Under the pieces are notes generated by a model. It saw only the letters and a program-made list of their open reading frames with translations, was not told where the DNA came from and did not search any database. Positions 1,055-23,151 of a stretch of 64,000 nucleotides of DNA are shown here, piece by piece. The stretch covers positions 124,001-188,000 of IMG/VR virus record IMGVR_UViG_3300025536_000010. One strand, written 5' to 3'. The translations under genes and the position numbers were made by a program. How positions within the stretch are numbered: position 1 is the first letter of the stretch; each line of letters begins with the position of its first letter.

Positions 1055-1524
1055 TTGCGGACCTCCTGACGGACCTGTACCAGCCGGAGGCGAAGATCAT
1101 TAAACAACTGTACCAGCGCCACACGGATACCAGCGACCCAACGAAAGGTGACTGCTTTGCAACCTGCGTGGCGATGATCCTGGGTCTGCAACAAGACGAA
1201 GTACCTAACTTCTGCGGCATTGCGACGGACTGGTGGCCTGGGTTCCAGAAATGGTTAGAGGAGCGACACCTAGTCGCTATCGAGGTCAACCTGCCGCCTC
1301 CTCCCTGGAAAAACCTTGGGGCGCTGACACCAGGCGTGCCCGTCATCCTCACAGGTAAAAGCCCAAGGGGTGATTGGTTGCACTCGATTGTTGGCATGAC
1401 GCGGTGGGATGAAGGGTTTGAGATACTCTACGACCCACACCCGGCTGGTGGCGGGTTTGATGGGCCACTCAAACATGTGCTGTTCTTTGCAGCGCTCAGA
1501 CCAGACAAGGCAGGGAAGCCATGA
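1051..1524 (+). CDS. small papain-fold (C39-like) Cys-His-Asp protein
   Basis: GDCFATCVAMILG...WLHSIV...YDPHP; ATGA overlaps at both ends; visibly lower GC than flanks. Confidence 0.55.
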   Translation: MIADLLTDLYQPEAKIIKQLYQRHTDTSDPTKGDCFATCVAMILGLQQDEVPNFCGIATDWWPGFQKWLEERHLVAIEVNLPPPPWKNLGALTPGVPVILTGKSPRGDWLHSIVGMTRWDEGFEILYDPHPAGGGFDGPLKHVLFFAALRPDKAGKP

Positions 1525-3173
1525 TCGAACTCCGGCCGTTCTCGCAGCTGAATCCCGACGACGTGGCCCAGCAGCACGCTGAGGCCCTCCAGCGCGTCCA
1601 GGAGGACAACCCCAAGCTGGACCTGCGTCGAGGCGTATTCGCCGACCTCCTGATATACTACCATTCGATCCTGGCAGGCCAGGGTCAGATGAACATCAAA
1701 GACTACTGGCGGGCGCGCAGCCTCCAGGCGATGGAGGCCGACCCGGACCTGGCCACGGCCGACCCAGACCTGGTCGGCGACGTGATTTCTAACTTCAACG
1801 TCGCCCGGCAACCAGGGGCCAAAGCAACAGGCGAGGTCACCATCGTCGTTACCGACAGCATCACGGTGACCATCGGCATCGGGGCTGTTTTCGAGGCCCA
1901 GGGCCTGCGTTTCATTACCACGCGCGTCTTCACTGGCAAAACCTCCGGCCGGATCGACGACCCCGGCGACCGTTTGCTCACTCAGACGGCAGACGGTAAC
2001 TGGGCGTTCACCATCGAGGTCCAGGCCGAACAGGAAGGCGAGCAGTACCAGATCAAGAAGGACACGCTAATCGTACCGCTGGTGCTACCGCTCAACTATC
2101 GAACCTCGTTCGCCGCCAATGATTTCGAGGGCGGCTACCAGGCCGAGACGAACCAGGACTTGCTGCTGCGGCTCCAGGAAGGCGTAGCGGCGCGCGGCCT
2201 GGGCGGGCGCATCAACCAGACGGCCACGCTGCGCGCCGTCGAAGATTTCTCCAGAGTCATCGCCGTCTCCGTGGTCGGCTACGGGGACGCCGAGATGCTC
2301 CGCGACAAACACTGGGTTTTCCCGATCTCCGGCGGCGGCCGTGTCGATTGGTACGTCCGCAGCCAGGAAGAAGTGTTCCGCAAGAAACTGCTCAAAGAGG
2401 CCACGCTAATCTCCAAAACGGACAGCGGCGTCGGCACCTGGCAGGTTAGCATCGGCCGCGACGAGGCCCCTGGCTACTACGAGATCGACAACATCCGTCC
2501 CAAGGACTCCGGTAACGCAGTCGGCGGCTTCGAGATCCTGACGGACGAGCGCGTCGCCGACTTGACCGGCCCCGGGTTCGTCCCGGACGTCTTGGCGGAC
2601 AGCGACGAGTGGGTCTACACCCGCTTCCAGGCCGGTGTCGTCCAGTTCGTCGATACCGTGCAGAGCGCTGCGGCCCTGGCGCTAGGAGCCAAGCGTGAGT
2701 ACGAGCTAGAGGCCCGCTGTCTGCCTCTGGTCGCCGAGATCCAGGACACGTTCAGTACGCCGGACAGCCGACCCAAACCTTACGACTTGCTGGTCAAAGC
2801 CCCGGTGCCGTGTTTTCTCAACCTGACCTTCACTGTTTACAAGCGCTCCGGCGAGGCCGACCCGGACCTGGCAGCCATGAAAACGGCGCTATGTACGGAG
2901 GTCAACAGCGTTGGTTTCATAGGGCGGCTGTTCGCTAGCCAGCTGCACGACGTTATTCACGCTTATCTGCGGAACGACCAGACCGCTTCCGCCATCGACA
3001 TGTTTGGGCGTATCCGGTATCCTAGTGGTGAACCCGAATACGTCCGTGACAGCGAAAAACTCGAAGTACCGGACGACCCGGTAGCGCTGGTGAGTGCCAG
3101 GACGGTGCAGTTTTTCATCAGCCCCGAGGACATCAGTATCTCGGTCGAAACGTCTGTGCCGTCGAGTCTGTGA
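1521..3173 (+). CDS. baseplate J-like protein
   Basis: NFNVARQPGAKATGEVTI, VQAEQEGEQYQI, GGYQAETNQDLLLR, GGRVDWYV motifs typical of baseplate J/gp47. Confidence 0.8.
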   Translation: MIELRPFSQLNPDDVAQQHAEALQRVQEDNPKLDLRRGVFADLLIYYHSILAGQGQMNIKDYWRARSLQAMEADPDLATADPDLVGDVISNFNVARQPGAKATGEVTIVVTDSITVTIGIGAVFEAQGLRFITTRVFTGKTSGRIDDPGDRLLTQTADGNWAFTIEVQAEQEGEQYQIKKDTLIVPLVLPLNYRTSFAANDFEGGYQAETNQDLLLRLQEGVAARGLGGRINQTATLRAVEDFSRVIAVSVVGYGDAEMLRDKHWVFPISGGGRVDWYVRSQEEVFRKKLLKEATLISKTDSGVGTWQVSIGRDEAPGYYEIDNIRPKDSGNAVGGFEILTDERVADLTGPGFVPDVLADSDEWVYTRFQAGVVQFVDTVQSAAALALGAKREYELEARCLPLVAEIQDTFSTPDSRPKPYDLLVKAPVPCFLNLTFTVYKRSGEADPDLAAMKTALCTEVNSVGFIGRLFASQLHDVIHAYLRNDQTASAIDMFGRIRYPSGEPEYVRDSEKLEVPDDPVALVSARTVQFFISPEDISISVETSVPSSL

Positions 3174-3189
3174 CACAAGGAGGTGTACA

Positions 3190-10096: not shown

Positions 10097-11932
10097 ATGT
10101 CCTTTGAACGCTTCCTCACACTGGTACAGGAGAGGGACCGGGTTAAAGCCGGGACGGTCAACAAACCGCTCCGCACCACGGACCAGAACGTCCGTTACCT
10201 GTGGGACGTCCTCCAGGCCGCCGGCATCGGCTCGACCGTCTACCTGCACCGGCAGACGGTGGAGCCCGAAGTCCACAAGGGCATGGCTGTCTGGCTCAAC
10301 CCGGACACCACGCGCTTCGAGCGCTGCCTGGCCTTCGCTGACGTCGACGGCGCCACGGGCGTCGTTTACACGGCCAACTCGGCTCAGGTCTGGGGCGTCG
10401 TCACGGAGAAGATCAACGCCACGCTGGCCGAGATCCTCTTGTTCGGCGTTGTTGACCTGAACCTGTCCGAAGCCGTTGCCGACAGCGACGACCTGGGGCC
10501 GGGCGTCTACTACCTCTCGTCCAGCCAGCCCGGCAAGCTGACGCGGCAGAAGCCACCTGTCTCGGTGGCCGTGCTGCGCGCCACCACGGACGGCAAGGTG
10601 TTCGTGATGCCGCAGTTCGTGGACTTCCTCGACCGGCACACGCACTACCGTTTCAGCTTGACCTGCGCCCCGGCTGGTGACACGACGCCGCCGGCTCCGG
10701 GCGGCACACACGCGATCACCAGCCCCAACGTCCTGACGCAAGGTTGGCTGCCGGCTGGACACAGCAGCTTCAACGGTAAAGCCCCGCCCGGAGCCGTCTT
10801 TGGCTACAACCTGGAAGCACACACGGCCCTCAAGAACCTGTGGCCGCCTCAACCGTTCAACAACGCCTACCTGGAGTTCGACCGCGGCGAAGACTCGGCC
10901 CTGGGCTTCATCGGCGTGCCGCTGGGCAGCAACGGCCTGTGCGTCGCCGACCGTTATGGCATCTGGTGGATGTCCAACTGCTACGGGGACGTGCCCTGGC
11001 CTACAGCGCTCGACACCGAAACGTCTGACAGCTACTCGGACTCTTCCGATGTGGAGTGCCCGCGGCATCTCCAGATGGCCATGCAGCTGTGGTTCACCAA
11101 GATCAATTTTGCCACCGACTTGACGTCGGTACTGTCGCTGCATTCGGGCGACAACCGCATCCGAGTCCGCTGCTACGGCAAGCCTGACCAGGTGGCCAGC
11201 ACCGGGCACCTAGAACTGTTCCTCAACCTGAACCTGGTGGTCAAGGACGACCAGCCTGGCTACCTGGCTTTCAAAGACTTCGACCCGGAGAAAGCAGAGT
11301 TCAAACGCGGCCCGGTGGTGGAAGGCTTCTACAAGCTCTCCAACAACGTCACCCTGGTCGGCACCAAAGTCGGCGAGCGCGAGATCGGTGACACCACCTA
11401 CGATCTCTACCAGGGCTTGGTCGGTATCGCTGTGGCCCCGGAAGAGACGCTCGAACTGCCGGTGCAGCTGGTACGGCTCAAAGGCGTCGAGGAAGACTTC
11501 TTCCAGGATCTGATGTATCTGGCCTTCCGCCCAGCTGTCCAGGAGGAATACCGCGCCAAGCTCGTCGTGCCGTCGGATCTAGCTATCCCCAACCCGCAGA
11601 TGAAGATCCGCATGGCGATTATGGGCCGCGCGGCCGGCACGCTGCCGGTCCTCACGGTAACGGCGCGCCGTGCCGCCAGACCCGAGGACGGCCTGGGTAC
11701 GCCGCTGTCCCTGCCGCTGACTGGCGCAGAGTTCTCGGTCACCATCGACACCCAGGGCGTACTGACCCTGGCAAACCAATACGTCGAGGCCGAGAGCGAA
11801 CCGTTTGACGTCGCGCCAGGGGATACAGTGTTTTTCACCGTCAGGCGCCTGGCCACGGACGGCTACGGAGCCGACGTGGGTATCCTGCGGCAGTCGGGCA
11901 TTTTGCTTTCAGGAGAAGACGATGAGGATTAG
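10097..11932 (+). CDS. putative tail structural protein
   Basis: 611 aa; SD AAGGAGG; GVYYLSSSQPGKLT motif seen in virion proteins. Confidence 0.65.
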   Translation: MSFERFLTLVQERDRVKAGTVNKPLRTTDQNVRYLWDVLQAAGIGSTVYLHRQTVEPEVHKGMAVWLNPDTTRFERCLAFADVDGATGVVYTANSAQVWGVVTEKINATLAEILLFGVVDLNLSEAVADSDDLGPGVYYLSSSQPGKLTRQKPPVSVAVLRATTDGKVFVMPQFVDFLDRHTHYRFSLTCAPAGDTTPPAPGGTHAITSPNVLTQGWLPAGHSSFNGKAPPGAVFGYNLEAHTALKNLWPPQPFNNAYLEFDRGEDSALGFIGVPLGSNGLCVADRYGIWWMSNCYGDVPWPTALDTETSDSYSDSSDVECPRHLQMAMQLWFTKINFATDLTSVLSLHSGDNRIRVRCYGKPDQVASTGHLELFLNLNLVVKDDQPGYLAFKDFDPEKAEFKRGPVVEGFYKLSNNVTLVGTKVGEREIGDTTYDLYQGLVGIAVAPEETLELPVQLVRLKGVEEDFFQDLMYLAFRPAVQEEYRAKLVVPSDLAIPNPQMKIRMAIMGRAAGTLPVLTVTARRAARPEDGLGTPLSLPLTGAEFSVTIDTQGVLTLANQYVEAESEPFDVAPGDTVFFTVRRLATDGYGADVGILRQSGILLSGEDDED

Positions 11933-12052: not shown

Positions 12053-12454
12053 ATGTCCTACTGGAACGGTTGGCCCCGAGAATGGGACTACAACGAGAAG
12101 CTCATCTGGCGAGCCCTCAGAGCCCTCCAGCGCTTCCCCGACAAGTGGCTAAGCGCGAGGACCGTTACCGCCCTTATGGACCCGCCCTGCCACCGGAGTC
12201 ACGGCCGCGGCTTCTGCCGGGCGCTGTACAAGATGGGCTACCTCGACCGCGACGACTGCGGCCACTATCGGGTGAACGCGCTCGGCGTACGGCACAGCCG
12301 CATGAACGACGAAGTACGCGAGTTGATGCGGCGGCGGGCTTACCGGCCCGTGCCGCTGCCGGAGGGTCTGGAGCACCTGTTCACGGACGAATCCCAGGCG
12401 CTCAGCAAGGCGCGGAAGGAGAGCACGGATGCCTCTCGGGCACTGGAACGTTGA
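12053..12454 (+). CDS. putative winged-helix protein
   Basis: WLSARTVTALM...RALYKMGYLDRDDCGHYRV pattern. Confidence 0.45.
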   Translation: MSYWNGWPREWDYNEKLIWRALRALQRFPDKWLSARTVTALMDPPCHRSHGRGFCRALYKMGYLDRDDCGHYRVNALGVRHSRMNDEVRELMRRRAYRPVPLPEGLEHLFTDESQALSKARKESTDASRALER

Positions 12455-13385
12455 ATGGCTGAACCACAACAGCCAACGAAGCTACCCCCTGGCGGATGAC
12501 GCCAGCGGCCTCGACGACAGCGGGGACTTCGAGCTTCCTGACGACTTCATCGTCGAACTGGACCTGCCGGTCCACGCCGGCATGGACGTAGACCCGGCGC
12601 GCTTCTTCATCAAACACATCGGGGCCTACTCGACCGGCTACGCTGTCATCGTCGGCTACCAACCCTCTGCCGGTGACGCTATCACAGTTGCCTCCGCCCT
12701 GATTCCGCGCCAGACGCACGCACGCAACACGGCCTACGCCCTGGGCGGCATCGAGCCCTTTGACGACACCGTGGGCAAGCTCGTCATCGGCAAGCTCGAC
12801 AACATCGACGAGCAGCCACCAGGCTACTGGAACTTCTCGCTGGAGAACGCCAGACTGGAACCCGACGCTGTCCGGCCGATCATTCGCGGTGTCTCCAGCG
12901 TCGTCTGCGTCAACGGCGACCAACGCTCGCTGCCGCTGCGTGGTGTGCTCGAACTCCAGGCCGGGCAGAACATGCAAATCATCCCGATCCTAGTGAGCGG
13001 GCAAGACCCAATCATTCGTTTCAACGCCATCGACGGCGAGGGTACAATCGACGAGTGCGTCTGCGAGGGCGACGCGGCTCCCACGGACCCGATCAAGCGC
13101 ATCAACGGCGTCGCCCCGACGCCTACCGGCGACTTCAACATCATCGGCACGGACTGCCTCCAGATCGAAGTGATCGCCAACGGTATTCGCCTGGTCGATA
13201 AATGCTCGGCCCCGTGTTGCGACTGCAAAGACCTGGAACGCATCACCCGCGACCTGGAACGCCTCAACAGTCAGGCCGCAACCGTCAACGACTTCGTCGA
13301 ACGCCTCCGAGACTCGGTCAACACGTTCGACCTGATCGTCCTCGGGTCCAAACTGGGCGACCGCGGCTGCGTCACCTGCGAATAG
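12429..13385 (+). CDS. Cys-rich tail protein, paralog 1 of 5
   Basis: EWLNHNSQRSYPL N-terminus; IKRINGVAP..GDF motif; PCCDC followed by coiled coil. Confidence 0.7.
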   Translation: MPLGHWNVEWLNHNSQRSYPLADDASGLDDSGDFELPDDFIVELDLPVHAGMDVDPARFFIKHIGAYSTGYAVIVGYQPSAGDAITVASALIPRQTHARNTAYALGGIEPFDDTVGKLVIGKLDNIDEQPPGYWNFSLENARLEPDAVRPIIRGVSSVVCVNGDQRSLPLRGVLELQAGQNMQIIPILVSGQDPIIRFNAIDGEGTIDECVCEGDAAPTDPIKRINGVAPTPTGDFNIIGTDCLQIEVIANGIRLVDKCSAPCCDCKDLERITRDLERLNSQAATVNDFVERLRDSVNTFDLIVLGSKLGDRGCVTCE

Positions 13386-13394
13386 GAGGCCAAG

Positions 13395-14948
13395 ATGTCG
13401 CACCCCTTCGGCCGCCAACCTATCGGCCCCAACCAGCCGCCCGGCGGCGGTACAAACTATCCGTTTGTTGCGCCCGAGGACGATGTGCGCCAACTCCTCG
13501 GCGACTTCTACCTGTCTTACGAGGACGACACCTGCGCCTTCGCGCTACCGCTGCGCGTCACCTGGCTCTACGGCTTCGGCGACAACGTCGTGGCTGCGCC
13601 GTCTGGTACGCCCACGCCGGTCCACGCCCAAGACCTGGTCGTCAAAGACGCTGAGGGCGTTACGGTCTTCGACTCGACCCAAGCGGTCGATTTCAAGACG
13701 ACGGTCTGGGGCGGGCGCCTGCTGGTACTGGAGTGGACCACGGAGACACAGGTCTGCCGCTGCACTGTCCACACCGCCTGGGACGCCGAGGATACGCCGC
13801 TGACCTACGACAACCACATCGTCCCGGAGAACGGCGAACTCGACGCCCGGACCTACAACCGTCTGCCCGGCCGTGTAAAAGCGTTTCGAGTCGGCCTCCA
13901 GACGATCACCGGCAACGTCCAGTTCGACGCCGGTTTCAACATGGCTATCGCCGGCAGCAGCACGCCGCGCACGGATGGCACGTTGTTCGTCGACCGCGTC
14001 GACATGGACGCCGTCCCCGGCGCCGGGCTCGGTCGCCAACCAGGCTGCGAGGAAGCCGAGGTCGTCACGCGGCTCATTAACGCAATCGGCCCCGACAAGG
14101 GCGGCAACTTCATAATCGAACTGGATGAGTGCTACCGCGGGCAGCTAGCCGCTTTCGCCCAGGATACCGAAGACGGGCGCACCGCCGAGTACGGCGCTGA
14201 CATCTACACGGACGAAGAGGCCAAAAGCGCACTGAGAATCTTCAACGACTGCCAACCGTGCTGCCCCTGCGATTACTACGTCCGCACCTACAAGGGCCTC
14301 AAGCGCGTCTGGGACAAGTGGAAAACGGCCGGCGTGGCCGCCGAAGAGGTCCGCGACCTCTACAAGGACAACGTCAACCGCTGGGAGGAACAGCGGCAAT
14401 GCCGCATTGAGCACCCGGCACGACTGGTCGTCAGCGCCGACAAGCAGTGCCGTGTGTTCGTGGGTGGCACCTACTGTAACTTCTCGAAATGCTGTCTGCG
14501 GGACATCGAGTTCCGTTTCACGTTCGAGTGGATACGCAACGGGCAAACAGAACCCGAGCCGGTCCATGACCTGCGCGTGTTCGATTCTTTTGTGAACGCC
14601 AGTTACACCGAAGGGGAGGAGCCGATCACGCCGCTGGTGACTGCCTCAACCGTCCGTTTCCTGATCGACTACGCGGACCCGCAGGCGATCACCCTGGTCA
14701 AGTTCCGGGTCTGCATCACCTGCGAGCGCGGCGACACGCTCAAGGTGTGGTTCAGTGTCCACGTCCCTGACCCTGGCCTGGACGCAGCCGGCGAGCCGTG
14801 CGAGTTGCCAGTGATAGAGATCCCGGCGCACCTGATCGAGATCTGGCTGAACGACGGGTTGCCGGAGCCCGAGCCAGCACGGGCGCTCGTAGTGAAGCTC
14901 GCACCGCTCGACCCAGTCAACCCGGTTTCCAGCTGCGTCGTTTGCTAA
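13395..14948 (+). CDS. Cys-rich tail protein, paralog 2 of 5
   Basis: TNYPFV; LINAIGPDKGGNF; CQPCCPC followed by coiled coil. Confidence 0.7.
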   Translation: MSHPFGRQPIGPNQPPGGGTNYPFVAPEDDVRQLLGDFYLSYEDDTCAFALPLRVTWLYGFGDNVVAAPSGTPTPVHAQDLVVKDAEGVTVFDSTQAVDFKTTVWGGRLLVLEWTTETQVCRCTVHTAWDAEDTPLTYDNHIVPENGELDARTYNRLPGRVKAFRVGLQTITGNVQFDAGFNMAIAGSSTPRTDGTLFVDRVDMDAVPGAGLGRQPGCEEAEVVTRLINAIGPDKGGNFIIELDECYRGQLAAFAQDTEDGRTAEYGADIYTDEEAKSALRIFNDCQPCCPCDYYVRTYKGLKRVWDKWKTAGVAAEEVRDLYKDNVNRWEEQRQCRIEHPARLVVSADKQCRVFVGGTYCNFSKCCLRDIEFRFTFEWIRNGQTEPEPVHDLRVFDSFVNASYTEGEEPITPLVTASTVRFLIDYADPQAITLVKFRVCITCERGDTLKVWFSVHVPDPGLDAAGEPCELPVIEIPAHLIEIWLNDGLPEPEPARALVVKLAPLDPVNPVSSCVVC

Positions 14949-14958
14949 GGAGGCGTCG

Positions 14959-16656
14959 GTGCCGATTCGTAACCTACACTGGACCAACCGCAACGACGGG
15001 ATCAAATACCCCGTCGACGATCAGGCAACGGCCCTGGACGATGCCGGTGCGCTCCTGCCTTCGGAGATTCTCGCGGACTTGTTCCTACGCTGGCCGAAGC
15101 ACCTCGGCGACTACGCTTTCCTGTCGTCGGTCAGTGTCACGCGCTCCTTGGTCACCGTCACGATCCAGGCGGCCCGCACGCTCGACGACGAGGATTTCAC
15201 CCCGCTGGCCGTGCTGTCTGTCACCAAGCCGGTCCAGGACGGCCGCGTCTACGCGCTCCAGCCGCAGGTCCAAGGCGTCGGCGGCTGGGTCGTTTTCGGC
15301 CGCGGCGTCCAATTCGATCCAACAGACGGTCTGGTCTACCGTGGTCGTTTCTCCTCACCACGGCAAAGTCGCCTGGCGCCGCGCGCGGCTCGGCCTTACC
15401 GTGGCTTGCCCGTTCACAGCGCCCAGGTCCAAAACGCGGCCACCAGGCTAACAGGCGTAGTCCTGCTGCGCGGCGTCCTACCCGTGCGCGTGGTCAAAGA
15501 GGAGCGGACGATTGACGGCGTACTGCGCGACTGCATCGTCATCCGCCTGGTCGACGTGGCCGGCGTCGACGGTTTTGCCGTACCGGCGGCAGCCCGCGAG
15601 ATCTCCGGCTTCAAAGAAGCCAGTTCTTTTCAGGAGTTCGCCGGCCCCTGCGCCAACCGGCCCGAGTCTGGTACTTGCGGCACGCCGGAACCTATCGAGT
15701 TCGTCAACGCCGTGGCCCCTGACTGCAACGGCGTCCTCACCCTGGAGTTCCGCGGCTGCGCCGCCGTAGCCCAGGTCTTGGGGACGTGCGGCATTATCGT
15801 AGACTGCGACCTGGGCCTGGCCCGAGCCTGCTTGCCGCCCTATATCCCCAGCAGCGACGGCAAACTGCCCAGTGAATACGACCCCATTGTTGTCGAACCG
15901 CCCATCGACCCGCCGCCACCGGACCCAGAGCCCGGCGCGTCGGAGTCGTTGGTGGTACTGGGCGAATTGCCTTATATCGACTGCTTCCACGACGGCGTGG
16001 CCGATGACTTCGTGAACAAGTATGGCCTGTGGCAGCTGGTCGAGGACGACAGTCCCGCGACCATGTGTGACGACGAATCGGTGCCTGTGTCTGAGTCCCT
16101 ATCGGCGTCGACATCCGCGTCGGTCGGTAGTGAGCGCATCTTGCAAAGCCTGGAGGCGTACACGACAGCCAGCCGCAACATCACGGTCTGGGAGGGCTTT
16201 GACGACAGCACGGTCTACCGGCGGATCATGACCGACGTGAAACTGGCCCTCGGCCCGGCTGGGTCCAAAACCAACGCCGGCATCGTCCTCAACTACCGGC
16301 AGGCGTCGCCAAGCAGCACGGCCTACCTGTACCACCTGGTCGAGATCGACTACGAGACACAGGAGTTCCGCATTGTTCGCTTCAACGGCACTAACACTGT
16401 GCCAGTAGTCCCGGTGTCGGTGCCAGGTATCCACCCGGACGCCTGGTATCGGATCGACGTCAACGTCGTGCCTGGGGCGACGCCGGGGCAGATCACGATC
16501 ACGGCGCAGCTGACGTCCATCTCCGAGCCCGGCCTTATCGACGTCACGCTCAGCGTGACCGTCAACGATTACGGGACGACGCAGGGTCGGTTCGGTTTCC
16601 ACACCAACCGCGCCCTGGCTCGGTTCAGCTACTTCTACTTGCGGGAGTTTCCGTAA
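14959..16656 (+). CDS. Cys-rich tail protein, paralog 3 of 5, with C-terminal beta-sandwich (lectin-like) domain
   Basis: HWTNRNDGIKYPV; FVNAVAPDCNG; C-terminal NAGIVLNY...WYRIDV...GRFGF. Confidence 0.7.
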   Translation: MPIRNLHWTNRNDGIKYPVDDQATALDDAGALLPSEILADLFLRWPKHLGDYAFLSSVSVTRSLVTVTIQAARTLDDEDFTPLAVLSVTKPVQDGRVYALQPQVQGVGGWVVFGRGVQFDPTDGLVYRGRFSSPRQSRLAPRAARPYRGLPVHSAQVQNAATRLTGVVLLRGVLPVRVVKEERTIDGVLRDCIVIRLVDVAGVDGFAVPAAAREISGFKEASSFQEFAGPCANRPESGTCGTPEPIEFVNAVAPDCNGVLTLEFRGCAAVAQVLGTCGIIVDCDLGLARACLPPYIPSSDGKLPSEYDPIVVEPPIDPPPPDPEPGASESLVVLGELPYIDCFHDGVADDFVNKYGLWQLVEDDSPATMCDDESVPVSESLSASTSASVGSERILQSLEAYTTASRNITVWEGFDDSTVYRRIMTDVKLALGPAGSKTNAGIVLNYRQASPSSTAYLYHLVEIDYETQEFRIVRFNGTNTVPVVPVSVPGIHPDAWYRIDVNVVPGATPGQITITAQLTSISEPGLIDVTLSVTVNDYGTTQGRFGFHTNRALARFSYFYLREFP

Positions 16657-17495
16657 TGGCCCAGATCCTGTTCCCAGAATGGCGCAGGCAGAACGAGCCG
16701 ACCAAGTATCCGCTGGCGGAACAGGCCACCATGACCGCCCTGGACGGTCGTGTGCTAGTCGAAGGTACGTTCCTGGACGCCGCCCTGTACCCTATCGGAG
16801 CCAAAGCCGGCGTCTACCTGGCAGCCGTCACGCTCGATCACCAGAACGCTGTCATGGAACTGGGCGACCCGTTCGACAAAGCCCTGGCCTCGGCCACCTT
16901 CTCCTTGGTTGACCCGCCGGACGAGGTCGTCTTCGTCGACCGTTACGGCAGGCCGGCAGGCGTTATCGTCAGTGAGTCGACCCGGCTGGGCATCTTTCAG
17001 TCCTGGGGCGTCGGCCGGCACGAGTTCGCTCAGGAAGGCTCCGAGTTTGCTGCCACCTGCGTTATACCCACACCAGAGGTCGGCGTGCGCGGCTTCCTCC
17101 TGGAGACGGGCGAGTTGTTCGTAGGGGACGTGTGGCTGGTAGGCAGCGACGGCGTCGTCTTGCGCACCACGAACATCTCGGTGCCGGCCAGCTGCGGGCA
17201 ACCGGAGCGCACCGTCCGAGCCATCCGCGTCGACATCGTCGGCGACCCACTATTTCGCCGCCGGCTGTGTCAGCCGAACGACCTGTTCGACACGCCACGG
17301 TTCGTACGCACGGTGCGCGTCGTCGGCCCCAACTACACCTTCGAGTGTCCGCCGGACGCCGCCGGCAACCTCATGTTGGCCGCTGGCAACGGCCTGGCGG
17401 CAGACACGGTATTGCGGATCGCTGTTACCCCCAACGGGCTCAAGATCGGCTCGGTCGGCGAGTCGCAGAGTACCGAGAACGTGAACGCCTTCTAA
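16656..17495 (+). CDS. tail protein, paralog 4 of 5
   Basis: EWRRQNEPTKYPL; PPDAAGNL. Confidence 0.7.
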   Translation: MAQILFPEWRRQNEPTKYPLAEQATMTALDGRVLVEGTFLDAALYPIGAKAGVYLAAVTLDHQNAVMELGDPFDKALASATFSLVDPPDEVVFVDRYGRPAGVIVSESTRLGIFQSWGVGRHEFAQEGSEFAATCVIPTPEVGVRGFLLETGELFVGDVWLVGSDGVVLRTTNISVPASCGQPERTVRAIRVDIVGDPLFRRRLCQPNDLFDTPRFVRTVRVVGPNYTFECPPDAAGNLMLAAGNGLAADTVLRIAVTPNGLKIGSVGESQSTENVNAF

Positions 17496-17509
17496 AAAGT
17501 GGTTTATAG

Positions 17510-18502
17510 ATGTCCGAGAACTTCTACAACCTGAACGCCAACCGCTGCTACCCCTTCGTACTTCGCACAACGGGGCGCCCGGAGGACGGGCCGAGCACGC
17601 TGCTGAACCTGGCCCACGCCTGCGTGGTCGACGCCGGCTTCGTCCTCGCGGCCAAAAGTGGTTTCGCGTCGGGCGACCACACCGTCTACCTCAACCAGGT
17701 CCGGCGGCATGGCAGCACTTTCTATTTCGACTTCGCCTCGGACGCGCCTGAACTGTTCGAGGTGCCTTTGACGTTCACCCGCAACGTCGCCGATCCCGAC
17801 TACACCCTCAGCTTTACAGACTCGGGCGAGGTCGGGCTGTCTGAGTCGAGCGCATCGGGTAGTATGAGCCTGGGCGACGAATGTCTCGAACCGCTCTGGT
17901 CTGGTTTCCTGGTTTCGGGCAAGATGAGTGCCCTAGCACTGCTGCTGCCCGTGAACGGTACGATCACGAGGGGCGCCGGCGGTGCCGTCGTCGAACCGGC
18001 CTTGCTCCAGAACCTCGCTGGGACGTATGTCACGCGAGTCGGCCTGGCCAATGACGACCGCACCAGGGCGGACGCTCCCGAGGACTGCCCGGACATCGTG
18101 TTCCCTTACCCGACCGGGGTCATCCACATCCACACGAACTGCGTGGTGGGCGATCTGGTGTTCGTGGCAGGGGTCAACGCCGAAGTCCGGCAGAGTGACA
18201 CGGACAACGCTATCAGCTTTGGGGCCTCAGTCGGGGCCGGGGCGGGGCAGCCGTGCGACACCGTGGCCAGGTTCCCAGGGGAAGTGCCGCCCGAAGGCAG
18301 CAACCTCCTGGAAGGTGGGCTCCGCTGCAACGAGGTGTTGCGGTCGATCAACGGGATCGGTGGTCGGCAGTTCAACCTGATTGCCGGCCTGGGGGCCACC
18401 ATTGCCTCGGTGCCCGAGGAGAACAAGGTCGTCGTCGACCTCAACATGTTCGGCCTCGTGACGTGCTTCGACTCGATCTCCGAGGTATCGGAGAGTTGCT
18501 AG
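17510..18502 (+). CDS. tail protein, paralog 5 of 5
   Basis: FYNLNANRCYPFV; LRSINGIGG. Confidence 0.7.
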   Translation: MSENFYNLNANRCYPFVLRTTGRPEDGPSTLLNLAHACVVDAGFVLAAKSGFASGDHTVYLNQVRRHGSTFYFDFASDAPELFEVPLTFTRNVADPDYTLSFTDSGEVGLSESSASGSMSLGDECLEPLWSGFLVSGKMSALALLLPVNGTITRGAGGAVVEPALLQNLAGTYVTRVGLANDDRTRADAPEDCPDIVFPYPTGVIHIHTNCVVGDLVFVAGVNAEVRQSDTDNAISFGASVGAGAGQPCDTVARFPGEVPPEGSNLLEGGLRCNEVLRSINGIGGRQFNLIAGLGATIASVPEENKVVVDLNMFGLVTCFDSISEVSESC

Positions 18503-18512
18503 GAGGCCACGG

Positions 18513-21500
18513 ATGGCAGACCACCCGGCGTTCGACCCCACCAAATGCGACGTGGAGCCGGTCGAGCGGATTCCCTGCGAAGACCTGCTCGTCGATCCGC
18601 GCGTGCCGGACCCGCCGAAAGAGATCCCGGACTGCCCAGCGACCGAGATCGAGAAGCTGCCGCCGGACCCGCCCTGCCCGGAGTTGAACGTCAAACGGCA
18701 CCCGGATTTCCCGTCGCCGCAAGTGCCGGCGTACATGGACCACGACATCTGCGAAACGCCCAAGTTAAACTTCAAAATCGAGAAGGTCGGCTGCTGCGAC
18801 TTTGATTTTGTCATCGACCTGTGCATCCCTTGCCCGGACCTGGAACCGCTCTACCCGTTCATTAAGGGCGTGCCTTTCACGTTCAGCGAGTCGACGCTGA
18901 CCTACGGCTTCATCCGCAAGCCAAACTGCGACTTCGAGTTCAGGATCGACCTGGAGATCCACTGTCCGTTTATCGGCCCGCTCGGGTTCGCCGTGAACAA
19001 GGGGGTACGTTACGGCCCGGCGCTGCTGACGTACAGCTTCTCCAAAACGGGAGCTTGCGATTATTTCCTGAACATCGACGTCTCCGTGCCTTGCCCGGCC
19101 GTTGGACCTATTTTTCCTGGCGAAGTGACGCCCATTCCTTTCAACGGCGTCAGCACGCTCGGCTTCCTCGTCTACTGGTTCAATCGCGGCGTAAACTGCA
19201 ACTACGATCTGGACATTTTTGCGGCAGCGCCGTGCCCGCCTATTGGCCCAAACGAGCCGCTGACCAAGCTGATCCCGTACAGCAAGCAGCAGACGATCCG
19301 CTACTACATGAGGCGTGCGCAAAACCCGGACGGCTCGCCGAAGTGCGAGTACGAACTCATCATCGACGCCCGCATCAAGTGCCCGCGCATCGAGCCGATC
19401 AACCTCAAGACGGTGCCGCTGACCCAGGTAAACACTGCGCCCAAGCTGCGCTACATCTTCCTGAAAAACGAGACGACCTGCGAATACGAACTGGTTATCC
19501 AGGGCGAATACCACTGCCCGAAGATGCTGCCAGACATCGCGGCGCCGCAGGTGCGGCCGATCCCGTTCGGAGCGGTGCAGCAGATCGTCTACTTCTTCCG
19601 CAAGCAAGGCATCTGCGACTACTTCCTGGACATCAACGCCAACATTATCTGCCCGCCGATGAAGCCAGAGGTCTGGAAGAACGTCAACCTCCAGCTGGTG
19701 CAGGTGCCGCCCAAGCTGCGCTTCCGCTTCGTCAAGATCCCGCCCTGCGGCTGGGAGTTGGAGATCGAAGGCGAGTGGCACTGCCCGATCATCAAACCTA
19801 TCGAGGCGGCCAAGGGCGAGCGCGGCGTCAAATTCGGCGACCCGGGGCAGATCCGCTGGTGGTTCGTCAAGATACTGCCCTGCGAGTTCGAGTTGAAAAT
19901 CGAACTCGACGTGCCGTGCCCGATCCTCAAACCCATCGTCGAACAAGAAGTCGACCTGGTCAAAGTGTTTGAGGCGCCCAAGCTATTTTTCAAGTTTGTC
20001 AAAGACCCCGCCGCCGATAAGTGCGAGTTCACCCTGGACATCTCCGGGGAATGGTTCTGCCCCATCGTGGACCCGCCGGAAGACGCCCCCGGAGTCGCGC
20101 CGCTAGGCGGCGGCGCGGGCGGCGAAATACGCTGGTGGTTCAGACGGGAAGCGCCTTGCCACTACGAGCTAATCATCGAAGGCGAGTGCCCCTGCGTAGT
20201 CATGCAGCCGGTCGACTTGACCAGCATACCGATCACCTTCACGAACAACGACGAAGGCTGGTTCGACTTCTATTTCGAGAAAGACCCGGACGACTGCATC
20301 TGGACGCTCGTCGTAGAAGAGATCCGCGTGCCGTGCCCCAAGATCGGGCCGACCGTGCTCGTCACCAAAGACGTTCACCCGGAGGACGTGCCCGGAGCCT
20401 TGGGCACGCTGGAGTATGTGTTTGTCAAAGCCGGAGCCGGCTGCCAGTACGACCTGGAAATCGACCTCATCACTCCTTGCCAGGAACACCTGCCCGATTG
20501 CGCGGCACCCGACGTCAAGCCAGTCCTCTGTTCGGGAACGTGCGAAGGCGAGTTGACCTACTGCTTCACGAAATACAACGAGTGCGATTACGATCTCAGC
20601 ATCGACGTCACCGTGCCGATCTGTCCGCCGGTCTGTACCTTCGACATCGAGATAAACTGCCACGACGAACCGTTTACGCCGACCGGCACCTGCGATGTTA
20701 CCGTCGTCAACGGTTGCGAACTCCAGTTCGACATGGTCTTGGACCTGGTCTGCGGCGGCGACGGCGATCAAGGCGCACAGGGGCATCAAGGCGCGCAAGG
20801 TGGAGCCGGCGGTGCCCAAGGACCACAAGGCCACCAGGGCGATCCTGGCGCTCAAGGCGATCCTGGCGACCCCGGACCACAAGGCGATCAGGGGCACCAA
20901 GGCGACCAGGGCGAAAAGGGCTGCGGCACCTGGCAAGGCCAGTGGCTGGCGGCTACCGCCTACGCAGCGTGCGACATCGTCTTCAACGACGGTGAGACGT
21001 TCCTCTGCACCGACGACCACACCTCGGCAAGTGGTGATGAGCCCGACATAGGAGCAACCTGGGCGACCAAATGGGACCGCATGGCCACCGGCATCAACTG
21101 GCGCGGTCCCTGGACAACGGCGACTGTCTACGGCGAGCACGACGCTGTCGAGAACAACGGCTCGTCCTACATCGCCAAGCTGACGCACACTTCCAGTGCG
21201 GGCACGGAACCTGGCGTGGGCGGCGGCTGGAACGTCGCCTGGGATCTGATGGCGGCCAAGGGAGCACAAGGCGCACAAGGCTCCCAAGGTGACCAAGGCA
21301 ACCAAGGTGTCCAGGGCAGGCAAGGCAACCAAGGCTTCCAAGGAAATCAGGGCACCCAAGGCTTCCAAGGGAATCAGGGCCTCCAGGGCCTCCAGGGCTC
21401 GACCGGCTCCAAACTGGCCATCGTGCCCTACTGGGACGAGTACGTTGCCCTGGCCTGCGTCGAAGCCCCCGAAGTACGCTTCGAGGACATCTTGCGAGTG

Positions 21501-21809
21501 CAGTTCAGCGGCGACCACCGCGACACGGTCATCGTTGACATTGACCCGGTATTTCTCGGCGTCTGCGAACCTGGTAGCATCGTTCCCGTCTCGGCTGTAC
21601 CCGCAACGCCGATCCCGGTTGGCGTGCAGGTCTGCGGCGGGCTAGTTTACGTCCGCGTCACGCGGAGCAGCGCAACGCCGCGCTTTCAAGGCGAAGTGAT
21701 TGTAAAACTGTCGGGCATCCGGCGGGATCACACCTGGCGCTTCCGGCGGCATACCGAAGACGACATGGTCGCCAACAACGCCTTCTGGCAAGGCTGGAAA
21801 AAGGAGTAA
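18513..21809 (+). CDS. tail fibre: ~15 Cys repeats, collagen-like segments, two CBM5/12-like modules, C-terminal chaperone-like domain
   Basis: C-x11-CP repeats; GxQ triplets ~20764-20920 and ~21261-21410; WQGQWLAATAY..D.V and WRGPWTTATVY..DAV; LACVEAPEVRFED. Confidence 0.8.
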   Translation: MADHPAFDPTKCDVEPVERIPCEDLLVDPRVPDPPKEIPDCPATEIEKLPPDPPCPELNVKRHPDFPSPQVPAYMDHDICETPKLNFKIEKVGCCDFDFVIDLCIPCPDLEPLYPFIKGVPFTFSESTLTYGFIRKPNCDFEFRIDLEIHCPFIGPLGFAVNKGVRYGPALLTYSFSKTGACDYFLNIDVSVPCPAVGPIFPGEVTPIPFNGVSTLGFLVYWFNRGVNCNYDLDIFAAAPCPPIGPNEPLTKLIPYSKQQTIRYYMRRAQNPDGSPKCEYELIIDARIKCPRIEPINLKTVPLTQVNTAPKLRYIFLKNETTCEYELVIQGEYHCPKMLPDIAAPQVRPIPFGAVQQIVYFFRKQGICDYFLDINANIICPPMKPEVWKNVNLQLVQVPPKLRFRFVKIPPCGWELEIEGEWHCPIIKPIEAAKGERGVKFGDPGQIRWWFVKILPCEFELKIELDVPCPILKPIVEQEVDLVKVFEAPKLFFKFVKDPAADKCEFTLDISGEWFCPIVDPPEDAPGVAPLGGGAGGEIRWWFRREAPCHYELIIEGECPCVVMQPVDLTSIPITFTNNDEGWFDFYFEKDPDDCIWTLVVEEIRVPCPKIGPTVLVTKDVHPEDVPGALGTLEYVFVKAGAGCQYDLEIDLITPCQEHLPDCAAPDVKPVLCSGTCEGELTYCFTKYNECDYDLSIDVTVPICPPVCTFDIEINCHDEPFTPTGTCDVTVVNGCELQFDMVLDLVCGGDGDQGAQGHQGAQGGAGGAQGPQGHQGDPGAQGDPGDPGPQGDQGHQGDQGEKGCGTWQGQWLAATAYAACDIVFNDGETFLCTDDHTSASGDEPDIGATWATKWDRMATGINWRGPWTTATVYGEHDAVENNGSSYIAKLTHTSSAGTEPGVGGGWNVAWDLMAAKGAQGAQGSQGDQGNQGVQGRQGNQGFQGNQGTQGFQGNQGLQGLQGSTGSKLAIVPYWDEYVALACVEAPEVRFEDILRVQFSGDHRDTVIVDIDPVFLGVCEPGSIVPVSAVPATPIPVGVQVCGGLVYVRVTRSSATPRFQGEVIVKLSGIRRDHTWRFRRHTEDDMVANNAFWQGWKKE

Positions 21810-21813
21810 TCGA

Positions 21814-23151
21814 ATGCTGGTCAGCGTTTTCACCCCGAGTCACAACCCCGAGTGGCTGGCCGACTGTTGGGCCTGCTTGCTGGAGCAAACGTACAAGGAA
21901 TGGGAGTGGATCATCGTCGCCAACGGCGACAACACCGACACAGTCGTCCTGTCTGTAGAGTTACTCTGCGGCGACGATCCGCGTGTCCGTGTCATCCGCT
22001 CCACCGAGACGAAGATCGGCGCGCTCAAACGGCTCGCCTGTGAGCAGGCGCTAGGCGACCTTTTCCTGGAGTACGACCACGACGACCTGCTCACCCACGA
22101 CTGTCTCGAAGCCGTGGTCGAGGCCGCCCGTGGGGCGCCCAAGGCCGCCTTTATCTGGTCCGACGACGTTAGCTGCGATTTCAGCGGGCAGAGCAAGCGC
22201 TACTCGGCTGACTGGGGCTGGCGGCAGACCCAGTGGACCTACAAGGGCAAGGAATACTGGATCAACGAGCATCACCCGATCACGGCTCGGTCCATGTGTG
22301 AGATTCTCTACACCCCGGACCACGTCCGCGTCTGGACCAGAGAAGCCTACCGACTGGTCGGCGGGCACAACAAGGAGATGCCCTACGGCGACGATCACGA
22401 ACTCATGGTGCGCACCTACCTCAAGGGCGTACCGTTCATTCATATCGCCAGGCCGTTGTACTTCCACCGGCAAGACGGCAAGAGCACCTGCCAGGTCAAA
22501 GTCAACGAGATCCAGCAGATCTCGCGGCAGAACCGCGACAAGTACCTGTACGACCTGGTCAAGGAATGGTGCCGCCGCGAAAAGCTGCCGATGTACGACC
22601 TGGGCGGCGCCCACGGTTGCCCGCTCGGCTACATCCCCATCGACATCAACCCCGCAGTCAAGCAGCACCCAGGCGGCATCTGCTGCGATGTCCTGCCCAA
22701 CGTCGACAACGAGGACGTCCGCGGCCTGAGCGGCCTTTACGCGCACCTCAAGCCAAACTCGGTCGGCTGCTTCCGGGCCTTCGACTTCCTGGAGCACATC
22801 CCCGGGCCGCAGATCCCGAAGCTGATGAACATGCTCTACGATCTGCTGGTGCCCGGCGGCTGGCTGCTGACTATGACGCCGGCCGTCTGCGACGACAACG
22901 GCCGGGCCGGACGCGGGGCCTATCAAGACCCCACGCACGTTTCGTTTTGGTCCAGCAACAACTTCTGGTACTACACCAAGAAGGACCAGGCCAAGTACGT
23001 CCCGGAGATCACCTGCCGCTTCCAGGCGGCGCGGCTGGCAAACCTCTACCCCAGCAAGTTTCACCACACGCATCTGATCCCCTACGTCCTCGCGGACTTG
23101 ATGGCTTTGAAAGACGGCAATGCGTACGCGCCGGGGCCGAAGGAGATCTAG
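21814..23151 (+). CDS. GT2 glycosyltransferase fused to a SAM-methyltransferase-like domain
   Basis: VSVFTPSHN...LLEQTYKEWEWII, YDHDDLL, GDDHEL; then YDLGGAH, AFDFLEHI, LVPGGWL, QDPTHVSFW. Confidence 0.85.
   Translation: MLVSVFTPSHNPEWLADCWACLLEQTYKEWEWIIVANGDNTDTVVLSVELLCGDDPRVRVIRSTETKIGALKRLACEQALGDLFLEYDHDDLLTHDCLEAVVEAARGAPKAAFIWSDDVSCDFSGQSKRYSADWGWRQTQWTYKGKEYWINEHHPITARSMCEILYTPDHVRVWTREAYRLVGGHNKEMPYGDDHELMVRTYLKGVPFIHIARPLYFHRQDGKSTCQVKVNEIQQISRQNRDKYLYDLVKEWCRREKLPMYDLGGAHGCPLGYIPIDINPAVKQHPGGICCDVLPNVDNEDVRGLSGLYAHLKPNSVGCFRAFDFLEHIPGPQIPKLMNMLYDLLVPGGWLLTMTPAVCDDNGRAGRGAYQDPTHVSFWSSNNFWYYTKKDQAKYVPEITCRFQAARLANLYPSKFHHTHLIPYVLADLMALKDGNAYAPGPKEI

What the first reader, a model, noticed from the sequence alone, without database searches (positions are those of the whole stretch)
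12429..18502. Five tandem, diverged paralogous Cys-rich tail proteins
Seen: a shared N-terminal motif (W/F)xxxNxxxxYP(L/F/V): WLNHNSQRSYPL, GGTNYPFV, WTNRNDGIKYPV, WRRQNEPTKYPL, FYNLNANRCYPFV. Also a shared later motif IN(G/A)(V/I)xP..G: INGVAPTPTGDF, INAIGPDKGGNF, VNAVAPDCNG, PPDAAGNL, INGIGG. Two also have PCCxC followed by a coiled coil. Inference: a hetero-oligomeric baseplate or fibre-attachment assembly built by gene duplication, unlike T4- or P2-type baseplates.
Basis: partly seen in the sequence, partly recalled or inferred. Interest (0 to 1): 0.6.

Follow-up and report, generated by a model that had tools for sequence, protein, structure and literature searches.

The report
Five paralogous jumbo-phage tail-tip proteins
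Five neighbouring genes of an uncultured 235-kb phage are anciently duplicated copies of one unclassified protein that probably forms three-chain fibre-like parts of the tail tip, one ending in a sugar-binding domain; the family is new, but duplicated tail-tip proteins are already known from other phages.

Summary
ORFs A (12429-13385), B (13395-14948), C (14959-16656), D (16656-17495) and E (17510-18502) share a core of about 260 residues. Profile-profile hhalign gives A vs B, C, D and E probabilities of 99.0-99.7% (E 1e-17 to 1e-25). The neighbouring gene U, used as a control, scores 1.3% or less.

No sixth copy exists in the 234,886-bp virus genome. The order U-A-B-C-D-E holds in nearly all of 80 related contigs of uncultured phages (36-226 kb, many about 200 kb). 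Each paralogue is a separate clade (SH-aLRT 97-100), so the duplications predate this phage lineage.

The core matches no Pfam, PHROG, PDB-sequence or cultured-phage entry. Even so, a core profile finds 5,750 cluster representatives in metagenomes.

Models show three parts: an N-terminal beta-sandwich, a central self-association region, and differing ends. A homotrimer of A is supported (ipSAE 0.56, best control 0.01). A and B end in PCCxC plus a coiled coil. C ends in a lectin-like domain (CBM66, Z 20.9).

A Baseplate_J gene lies upstream and a collagen/CBM5_12 fibre gene downstream. My best reading is conserved trimeric baseplate-periphery or fibre-anchor proteins. Co-assembly of the five proteins is untested. 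T4 gp10/11/12 is a precedent for the principle.

The parts
12429..13385 (+). Paralogue A, 318 aa. N-terminal docking motif at aa 10-21 (12456-12491). Beta-sandwich at aa ~20-145. Central self-association region at aa ~150-260, with the INGVxPxxxGDF motif at aa 225-236 (13101-13136). Invariant CxC at 210/212, plus C243 and C259. PCCDC at aa 262-266 (13212-13226). Heptad coiled coil at aa 266-313 (13224-13367). C-terminal CxxC.
   Evidence: ORF and translation. More than 460 homologues of the same length. AF2 model pLDDT 78.7, with the N-domain above 90. Three-copy model ipSAE 0.56 vs best control 0.01, with the interface at residues 152-260 and helix positions 269, 272, 276, 279, 286 and 290. 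a/d positions are L269 I272 L276 L279 A283 V286 V290 L293 V297 F300 V304. Conserved Cys.
13395..14948 (+). Paralogue B, 517 aa. Shared core at aa 1-~300, with a degenerate N-motif GGTNYPFV. INAIGPDKGGNF at 229-240. PCCPC at 288-292 followed by a helix. A fast-evolving C-terminal part (aa ~330-517) of unknown fold.
   Evidence: hhalign A-B 99.7%, E 1.8e-25, A 1-299 vs B 1-325. Conserved Cys at 218, 246, 286, 289, 290, 292, 336, 361 and 367. Ortholog lengths 438-1929 aa. Median identity to the window protein is 0.33 for the core and 0.15 for the C-terminal part.
14959..16656 (+). Paralogue C, 565 aa, GTG start. Shared core at aa 1-~296. Low-confidence Pro-rich linker. C-terminal ConA-like lectin/CBM66-like jelly roll at aa ~334-565 (15958-16653).
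   Evidence: hhalign A-C 99.5%, E 3.3e-22. AF2 pLDDT 82.7. Foldseek PDB: CBM66 and legume lectins, E 6e-7. VIA-align: CBM66 4b1m Z 20.9, rmsd 2.2, 159 aligned. Phage modules also match: 8zdo_a Z 16.6, 5ly8 Z 15.2, 9n6a Z 15.2. Some orthologs carry 150-400 aa inserts between core and lectin domain.
16656..17495 (+). Paralogue D, 279 aa. Core only. Its start overlaps the stop of C by one base.
   Evidence: hhalign A-D 99.1% and 99.4%, E 3.3e-21. C-D 98.7%. Ortholog lengths 249-317 aa. Start context.
17510..18502 (+). Paralogue E, 330 aa. Core with insertions. Conserved Cys at 193, 249, 273 and 319.
   Evidence: hhalign A-E 99.0% and 98.7%, E 2.1e-16. Found in 76 of 80 related loci.
10097..11932 (+). 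U, 611 aa. Conserved gene directly upstream of the set in all 80 related loci. It is not a paralogue and served as the negative control.
   Evidence: No Pfam or PHROG match. Only a weak lead to tail-collar-like models.
18513..21809 (+). Downstream tail-fibre-like protein, 1098 aa. Cys-containing repeats about 45 aa apart, two collagen GXY tracts, two CBM5_12 modules. A recognisable homologue of this protein was found in only 17 of the 80 related loci.
   Evidence: Pfam Collagen 1.4e-11 and CBM_5_12 1.9e-7. Tail-fibre PHROGs such as phrog_5073, 3.4e-30. Repeats. Homologues in 17 of 80 loci.
1521..3173 (+). Baseplate J / gp6-like wedge protein. It marks the start of the baseplate module on the same strand.
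   Evidence: Pfam PF04865, 5.6e-10. phrog_6 baseplate wedge subunit, 4e-18.

Best explanation
A-E are five ancient paralogues of one unclassified phage structural protein. Each keeps the same proximal half. That half has three pieces: a short N-terminal motif (W/F..N..R.YP[L/F]), a beta-sandwich of about 125 residues, and a central region of about 110 residues carrying GxVxLxxGxN, IxxxAxxGxG and CxxxIxxINGxxPDxxGN.

I propose that the central region intertwines three chains into a short fibre or spike, and that the three N-terminal sandwiches stay on the outside and dock the trimer to the baseplate. The distal halves differ:
- A and B continue into a cysteine cluster (PCCxC) and a coiled coil. 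The cysteines would staple the chains through disulfides or a metal.
- B adds a fast-evolving C-terminal domain.
- C carries a lectin-like jelly roll that would bind host surface glycan.
- D and E are core only.

Together they would form the conserved peripheral layer of the baseplate, or the anchor for fibres, in a lineage of uncultured large phages (related contigs 36-226 kb, many about 200 kb). They would sit between the gp6/J-type wedge and the fibre-like protein encoded next.

Shown: the paralogy, its age, the fixed synteny, the modelled domain layout and the lectin-like fold.
Supported by models only: self-association of A, modelled as three copies.
Inferred: virion location, docking role of the N-terminus, oligomeric state of B-E, cysteine stapling and glycan binding.
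For: - Paralogy: hhalign 99.0-99.7% for A against B-E, control U 1.3% or less. HMMs hit only these five ORFs in the genome.
- Age and fixed set: each family is monophyletic, SH-aLRT 97-100. The order U-A-B-C-D-E is seen in 58 of 80 related loci exactly and in 72 with at most a fibre gene added.
- Operon: gaps of 9-14 nt or a 1-nt overlap, with GGAGG sites before A, B and C.
- Tail context: Baseplate_J upstream and a collagen/CBM5_12 fibre downstream.
- Architecture: AF2 models of A and C have N-domain pLDDT above 90.
- Self-association of A, modelled as three copies: ipSAE 0.56 against a best control of 0.01. In calibration this mark was reached by 20 of 30 solved pairs and 1 of 23 single chains. 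Runs agree in at least 58% of contacts, and partner pLDDT is at least 66. The interface is residues 152-260 plus the heptad a/d positions; the N-domain is not in it.
- Lectin domain of C: CBM66 Z 20.9, and similar to phage receptor-binding modules at Z 15-17.
- Anchor/tip pattern: proximal cores evolve about as slowly as neighbour U (median identity 0.33-0.47 vs 0.35). Distal parts evolve faster (B C-terminus 0.15, C lectin 0.20) and vary in length.
- The most conserved 20-residue block of A, C, D and E is the N-terminus.
Against: - There is no experimental or proteomic evidence that any of these proteins is in a virion. No cultured phage carries a detectable relative.
- Apart from Baseplate_J, no tail family was recognised. 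The genome-wide searches for sheath, gp25/W, P2 gpI and gpV all found nothing. A contractile tail, and the exact position of these proteins in it, are therefore assumed.
- The central region is poorly modelled as a monomer (pLDDT 48-78).
- The three-copy result is a model score, outside the tool's calibration (two copies), and used my own alignment.
- The N-domain has only weak C2-like similarity (Z 5.5), which says nothing about docking.
- The role of the cysteines is conjecture.
Confidence: 0.55

Rival explanations
1. The five paralogues bind each other in fixed stoichiometry and form one hetero-complex. This could happen through mixed trimers via the shared central region, or through homotrimers that stack or branch, as in T4 gp10-gp11-gp12 or the CBA120 tailspike tree.
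For: All five are present together in nearly every related locus, in the same order. The genes are tightly coupled. The central region predicted to mediate self-association is the part shared by all five. There are precedents (PMC3004832, PMC8825819). A branching assembly of homotrimers is compatible with my best explanation.
Against: A alone is predicted to self-associate. Only A and B have the coiled coil, so mixed trimers with C, D or E would leave unequal ends. No fused paralogue pairs were found among related ORFs or the long database hits.
Confidence: 0.3
2. The five are alternative, independently acting receptor-binding proteins. Their duplication would widen host range, as in multi-tailspike phages, and they would not be structural baseplate parts.
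For: C ends in a lectin-like domain resembling phage receptor-binding modules. B and C vary greatly in length between phages, 438-1929 and 294-1228 aa. The distal parts evolve fastest.
Against: A, D and E have little or nothing beyond the shared core and keep a nearly constant length. The set is fixed at five with no gains, and losses are seen only in a few loci. Each family is ancient and monophyletic, unlike the rapid turnover typical of receptor-binding genes. The gene after E differs between relatives: a recognisable homologue of the window's fibre was found in only 17 of 80 loci.
Confidence: 0.1
3. They are not virion parts at all. They could be assembly factors or scaffolds for the tail fibres, or host-surface-modifying proteins encoded within the late operon.
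For: No virion evidence exists. Non-structural genes do sit in this module: an M10 peptidase, a glycosyltransferase-methyltransferase and a sigma-like ORF.
Against: The fibre-like predicted trimer with coiled coil, the terminal lectin-like domain of a kind seen in phage receptor-binding modules and the size and number of the proteins all fit structural parts better than chaperones.
Confidence: 0.05

Closest known systems
T4 baseplate periphery proteins gp10, gp11 and gp12
   Same: They are adjacent genes on one polycistronic message, and their structures superimpose, suggesting a common primordial fold (PMC3004832, section 8). From my own knowledge, each is a trimer and together they link the wedge to the short fibres. 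This is the same principle as proposed here: duplicated, diverged proteins forming the outer baseplate.
   Different: No sequence, profile or fold match was found here. The shared unit differs: here it is an N-terminal beta-sandwich plus a central region, whereas in T4 it is a helix plus small sheets. There are five members rather than three. Here the homology is still detectable by profile comparison; in T4 it is visible only in the structures.
SPN3US paralogue family C (gp168-170) and phiKZ gp131-like proteins
   Same: Paralogous, low-abundance baseplate or fibre proteins in a jumbo phage (PMC5694885).
   Different: They are much larger (135-188 kDa). tblastn of A, C and E against 50,697 phage records, which I expect to include phiKZ-like phages, found nothing.
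CBA120 tailspike complex TSP1-4
   Same: Several related fibre or spike proteins attach to the baseplate as a branched complex, using conserved N-terminal anchor and assembly domains and different distal receptor-binding parts (PMC8825819, abstract).
   Different: Those N-terminal domains belong to known families and the distal parts are enzymes against LPS. Here three of the five members have no obvious distal binding part, and no sequence match exists.
ConA-like lectin / CBM66 modules on phage baseplates
   Same: The C-terminal domain of C (aa 334-565) superimposes on CBM66 (Z 20.9, rmsd 2.2 A, 159 residues). It also superimposes on phage modules: Douge baseplate 8zdo_a, J-1 Dit CBM2 5ly8 and the TM4 gp23 receptor-binding domain 9n6a (Z 15-17).
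   Different: There is no sequence-level membership: no Pfam hit at E up to 1 and 9-16% identity. The binding site and ligand are unknown.
Cysteine-stapled trimeric rods, such as the collagen III cystine knot
   Same: Adjacent, invariant cysteines (PCC) lie exactly at the end of a trimeric rod-like segment. From my own knowledge of collagen III, such a pair forms interchain disulfides. A crystal structure of the knot-containing peptide is listed in the reference list of PMC7824840.
   Different: Here the rod is an alpha-helical coiled coil, and further conserved cysteines (CxC, C243, C259, C266) lie nearby. A metal site is therefore equally possible. Nothing was tested.

Membership tests
T4 gp10/gp11/gp12 group | Sequence or profile match to the families of gp10, gp11 or gp12 | tested here: not met
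   No PHROG hit at E up to 0.1 and no Pfam hit at E up to 1 for A-E. 75 A-family members against PHROGs gave nothing. 135 core sequences against Pfam gave nothing consistent.
T4 gp10/gp11/gp12 group | Shared fold: a helix with a perpendicular three-stranded sheet | tested here: not met
   Foldseek and VIA-align of model A against the PDB returned only C2 domains and coiled coils, best Z 5.5. Caveat: the central region is poorly modelled as a monomer, so this is a weak test.
T4 gp10/gp11/gp12 group | Adjacent co-transcribed genes for trimeric baseplate proteins | tested here: inconclusive
   Adjacency and coupling are shown. Self-association is supported only for A, in a three-copy model. Baseplate location is inferred from context.
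ConA-like lectin/glucanase fold (CBM66-like), C-terminal domain of C | Jelly-roll fold superimposable on CBM66 or legume lectins | tested here: met
   Z 20.9, rmsd 2.2 A, 159 of 165 residues of 4b1m. Foldseek E 6e-7, probability 1.0. Model pLDDT is about 95 in this domain.
ConA-like lectin/glucanase fold (CBM66-like), C-terminal domain of C | Carbohydrate-binding residues or a demonstrated ligand | not tested
   No site comparison was made. Identity to the templates is 9-16%.
C2 domain, N-terminal sandwich | Eight-stranded C2 beta-sandwich with Ca/lipid-binding loops | tested here: inconclusive
   Only weak similarity: Foldseek E 0.06 with TM 0.44 by target; VIA Z 5.0-5.5 over 81-86 residues. 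The tool's own note puts the typical best Z for models without a clear match at 7-8. Loops were not examined.
phiKZ gp131 / SPN3US gp168-170 paralogue family | Detectable sequence similarity to these proteins | tested here: not met
   tblastn of A, C and E against 50,697 phage records found no match at E up to 0.001 for A or up to 0.1 for C and E.
Cystine-knot or disulfide-stapled trimer | Conserved adjacent cysteines at the end of the trimeric rod | tested here: met
   C263 and C264 are invariant and C266 is 97% conserved in 67-75 A orthologs. C289, C290 and C292 are 97-100% conserved in B. The helix starts at residue 266.
Cystine-knot or disulfide-stapled trimer | Interchain disulfide bonds or a bound metal | not testable with these tools
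   This needs non-reducing gels, mass spectrometry, metal analysis or a structure.

The most novel reading that the evidence does not exclude
The shared core is a new fold family that builds a previously unseen outer baseplate. In this reading, five different trimers use one common N-terminal docking device and a cysteine or metal staple, and they co-assemble in fixed stoichiometry in a widespread, entirely uncultured lineage of large phages.
Probability: 0.25. Interest if true: 0.6.

Novelty: new variant of a known kind. Interest (0 to 1): 0.42.

Why it matters
The core of these proteins is absent from Pfam, PHROGs, the PDB and all cultured phages searched. Yet a profile of it finds 5,750 cluster representatives (50% identity) in metagenomes.

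It is therefore a large blind spot in the annotation of environmental large phages. Naming it as a tail-tip or baseplate module would let several thousand hypothetical proteins be placed. The lectin-bearing member and the fibre gene that follows the set could then be flagged as the likely host-recognition genes.

The case is also unusually clear evolutionarily. A multi-part phage organelle was built by repeated duplication of one gene, and the homology is still readable in sequence.

Tried and rejected
- **Single-protein scan of viral contigs.** A scan with C found nothing. The alignment-based scan with A then worked.
- **Cultured phages.** Megablast of the region, and tblastn of A, C, E and the Baseplate_J protein, against 50,697 phage records gave no match. 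No cultured relative could be named.
- **Pfam and PHROGs.**
  - Single proteins gave nothing.
  - Of 75 A members, one hit phrog_9992 'baseplate assembly protein' at E 0.0055. I treat this as chance.
  - 135 core sequences gave only scattered single hits.
- **PDB sequence search** with profiles of A and C gave only coiled-coil noise.
- **Fold searches with model A** (PDB Foldseek, VIA-align wide, BFVD, ESM Atlas) gave only weak C2-like and coiled-coil matches.
- **Atlas look-up of B** was uninformative; the Atlas model has pLDDT 0.36.
- **Atlas look-up of U** gave only a weak tail-collar lead.
- **Fused paralogues.** The search found none. The 940-aa 'A' ORF in L012 is an upstream in-frame ORF extension, not a fusion. 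The 931-aa database protein is A with an unrelated C-terminal extension.
- **Host.** The family occurs in metagenome bins labelled Gemmatimonadota, Phycisphaerales, Aquaspirillum, Synechococcaceae and Methylococcales. That spread is too mixed to name a host.
- **Other contractile-tail families** (sheath, gp25/W, P2 gpI, gpV) were not found in the genome.
- **Not used or not needed.** The reads tools were not used. No alternative genetic code was needed.
Full report
**Where the window lies.** The window is bases 124,001-188,000 of a 234,886-bp IMG/VR virus record rated complete. It is about 62% G+C and has no tRNA genes in the window. It is a tailed phage. A large terminase subunit lies at 45999-48389 on the minus strand (phrog_675, 6.6e-39). 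A Baseplate_J/gp6-like wedge gene lies at 1521-3173. There are two collagen-like tail-fibre genes.

**The observation.** Five ORFs follow each other on the + strand:

| Name | Coordinates | Length |
|---|---|---|
| A | 12429-13385 | 318 aa |
| B | 13395-14948 | 517 aa |
| C | 14959-16656 | 565 aa, GTG start |
| D | 16656-17495 | 279 aa |
| E | 17510-18502 | 330 aa |

- Gaps between them are 9-14 nt, or a one-base overlap for C/D. GGAGG sites precede A, B and C.
- The strict N-terminal pattern occurs four times in 222,193 residues of six-frame ORFs of the whole genome. All four are at the N-termini of A, C, D and E. B has a degenerate version.

**Are they paralogues?** Plain BLASTP gives only local hints: A-C N-terminus 40% over 47 residues, and A-B around PCCxC. 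I therefore collected orthologs.

- A has more than 460 homologues of nearly the same length in metagenomes.
- An alignment-based scan of IMG/VR returned 80 loci from phage contigs of 36-226 kb, many about 200 kb, at 78-35% identity.
- All five genes, and the upstream gene U (10097-11932), have orthologs in 76-80 of these loci.
- The order U-A-B-C-D-E is exact in 58 loci. In another 14 it is the same with one or two homologues of the window's fibre protein added after E.
- Profile-profile hhalign of the ortholog alignments gives A-B 99.7% (E 1.8e-25, A 1-299 on B 1-325), A-C 99.5% (3.3e-22), A-D 99.1% (7.7e-19), A-E 99.0% (7.9e-18) and C-D 98.7%. The other pairs score 74-96%.
- The U family, treated identically, scores 1.3% or less against all five.
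- The session's own hhalign on separately built alignments agrees.
- Family HMMs searched against all 1,361 six-frame ORFs of the genome hit these five ORFs and nothing else.
- On a tree of 135 core sequences, each family is one clade (SH-aLRT 97-100).

The duplications are therefore older than the sampled lineage, and there is no sixth copy.

**What is shared.** The consensus of the joint alignment is W..N..R.YPF near the N-terminus, then G.V.L..G.N, I...A..G.G, and C.........I..ING..PD..GN. The Pro of YP is invariant. One Gly and one Cys are nearly invariant. The first 20 residues are the best-conserved block in A, C, D and E.

**Structure models.**
- A, modelled with 75 sequences, has mean pLDDT 78.7. 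It shows a confident beta-sandwich (about residues 20-145, pLDDT above 90), a poorly defined stretch at 150-260, and one long helix at 266-313.
- The helix has hydrophobic residues at eleven successive a/d positions.
- Three copies of A give ipSAE 0.56 (runs 0.46, 0.58, 0.56) against a best control of 0.01.
- In the tool's calibration, the mark was reached by 20 of 30 proteins solved as pairs and 1 of 23 solved as single chains.
- The runs agree in at least 58% of contacts, and the partner pLDDT is at least 66.
- The tool notes that the counts hold only roughly, because I used my own alignment and three copies.
- The confident interface is residues 152-260 plus helix positions 269, 272, 276, 279, 286 and 290. 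That is exactly the region that is disordered in the monomer, plus the heptad core.
- The N-terminal sandwich takes no part in the interface.
- This is the layout of a fibre-like trimer with three free proximal domains.
- C, modelled with 50 sequences, has pLDDT 82.7. It has the same N-domain and a confident C-terminal jelly roll.
- That C-terminal domain matches CBM66 (Z 20.9, rmsd 2.2 A, 159 residues), legume lectins and galectin-like proteins. It also matches carbohydrate-binding or receptor-binding modules of phage baseplates: Douge 8zdo_a Z 16.6, J-1 Dit CBM2 Z 15.2 and TM4 gp23 Z 15.2.

**Cysteines.**
- In A, the invariant or nearly invariant cysteines are 210, 212, 243, 259, 263, 264 and 266. 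C314 is 85% conserved.
- B keeps the homologous set and adds three more.
- C keeps four, E four and D one.
- The PCC pair sits immediately before the coiled coil. I read it as a staple between chains, by disulfide or metal. This is inference only.

**Evolutionary pattern.**
- Over 45 loci that have all the genes, median identity to the window's proteins is 0.42 for A, 0.33 for the cores of B and C, 0.35 for D and 0.30 for E. Neighbour U is 0.35.
- The distal parts are much lower: 0.15 for the C-terminal part of B and 0.20 for the lectin domain of C.
- B and C also vary in length (438-1929 and 294-1228 aa), with inserts between core and lectin domain. A, D and E hardly vary.
- A recognisable homologue of the window's fibre protein was found in only 17 of the 80 loci.
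- The picture is a conserved proximal layer with variable tips. That is what one expects of baseplate-attached fibres and their anchors.

**Comparison with what is known.**
- The core matches nothing in Pfam, PHROGs or PDB sequences.
- No cultured phage has a detectable relative of A, C, E or the J-like protein.
- Fold searches with model A gave only weak C2-like matches for the N-domain, best Z 5.5.
- A profile of the joint core finds 5,750 representatives of 50%-identity clusters at E up to 0.001, and 1,697 at 1e-30. The family is large but unclassified.
- The principle has precedents. T4 gp10, gp11 and gp12 are translated from one message and have a common primordial fold (PMC3004832). SPN3US gp168-170 are paralogous baseplate or fibre proteins (PMC5694885). 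The CBA120 tailspikes form a branched complex through N-terminal anchor domains (PMC8825819).
- I therefore rate this as a new variant of a known kind.

**Limits.**
- Nothing here shows that the proteins are in the virion or that they touch each other.
- The genome-wide searches for the other contractile-tail families (sheath, gp25/W, P2 gpI, gpV) found none of them.
- No fused paralogues were found that would argue for contact between them.
- The host is unknown. The bins that carry the family span five unrelated taxa.

Noticed in passing
window 18513-21809 (+): The 1098-aa fibre-like protein after E starts with a Cys-containing signature C.[FYW][ED][LF].[IL] found 11 times, spaced 44-49 aa or about twice that. 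There are 44 Cys in the first 745 residues. Then come two collagen GXY tracts (aa 748-805 and 917-967), two CBM5_12 modules and a C-terminal domain. The repeat unit matched no family.
   Followed up: partly
window 3094-4134 (+): A matrixin-type (M10) zinc peptidase, with a sub-threshold match to a peptidoglycan-binding domain, lies directly after the Baseplate_J gene (Pfam 1.3e-29). The same gene sits at the same place in a related contig (L085), which also has a trypsin-like gene a few genes on. Proteases inside a baseplate module are unusual.
   Followed up: partly
window 21814-23151 (+); L085 20017-20535 and 20566-20960: A family-2 glycosyltransferase fused to a methyltransferase domain follows the collagen-like fibre gene. 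In the related contig L085, a 2OG-Fe(II) oxygenase gene stands next to the glycosyltransferase. This could mean hydroxylation and glycosylation of the collagen-like fibre. That idea was not tested.
   Followed up: no
genome 123377-124105 (window -623 to 105; L083 19377-19999): An ORF with a sigma-70 region 3 match (Pfam 1.3e-8; phrog_351 RNA polymerase sigma factor, 1.3e-5) sits in the middle of the structural gene block, just upstream of the baseplate genes.
   Followed up: no
genome 114415-120489 (L083 10415-16486): A 2024-aa ORF shortly upstream of the baseplate genes has no Pfam or PHROG match. So do its neighbours of 975, 917, 457 and 543 aa. It may be a tape measure or hub protein.
   Followed up: no
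genome 95977-99897 (L084 11977-15894): A second, larger collagen-like tail-fibre gene (1306 aa; phrog_5073, 3e-106) lies about 36 kb upstream of the paralogue set. The phage therefore encodes at least two collagen-type fibres.
   Followed up: no
window 12053-12454 (+): A 133-aa ORF lies between U and A and overlaps the start of A by 26 nt. A gene of 113 aa is called at the same place in related contig L085. No function is known.
   Followed up: no
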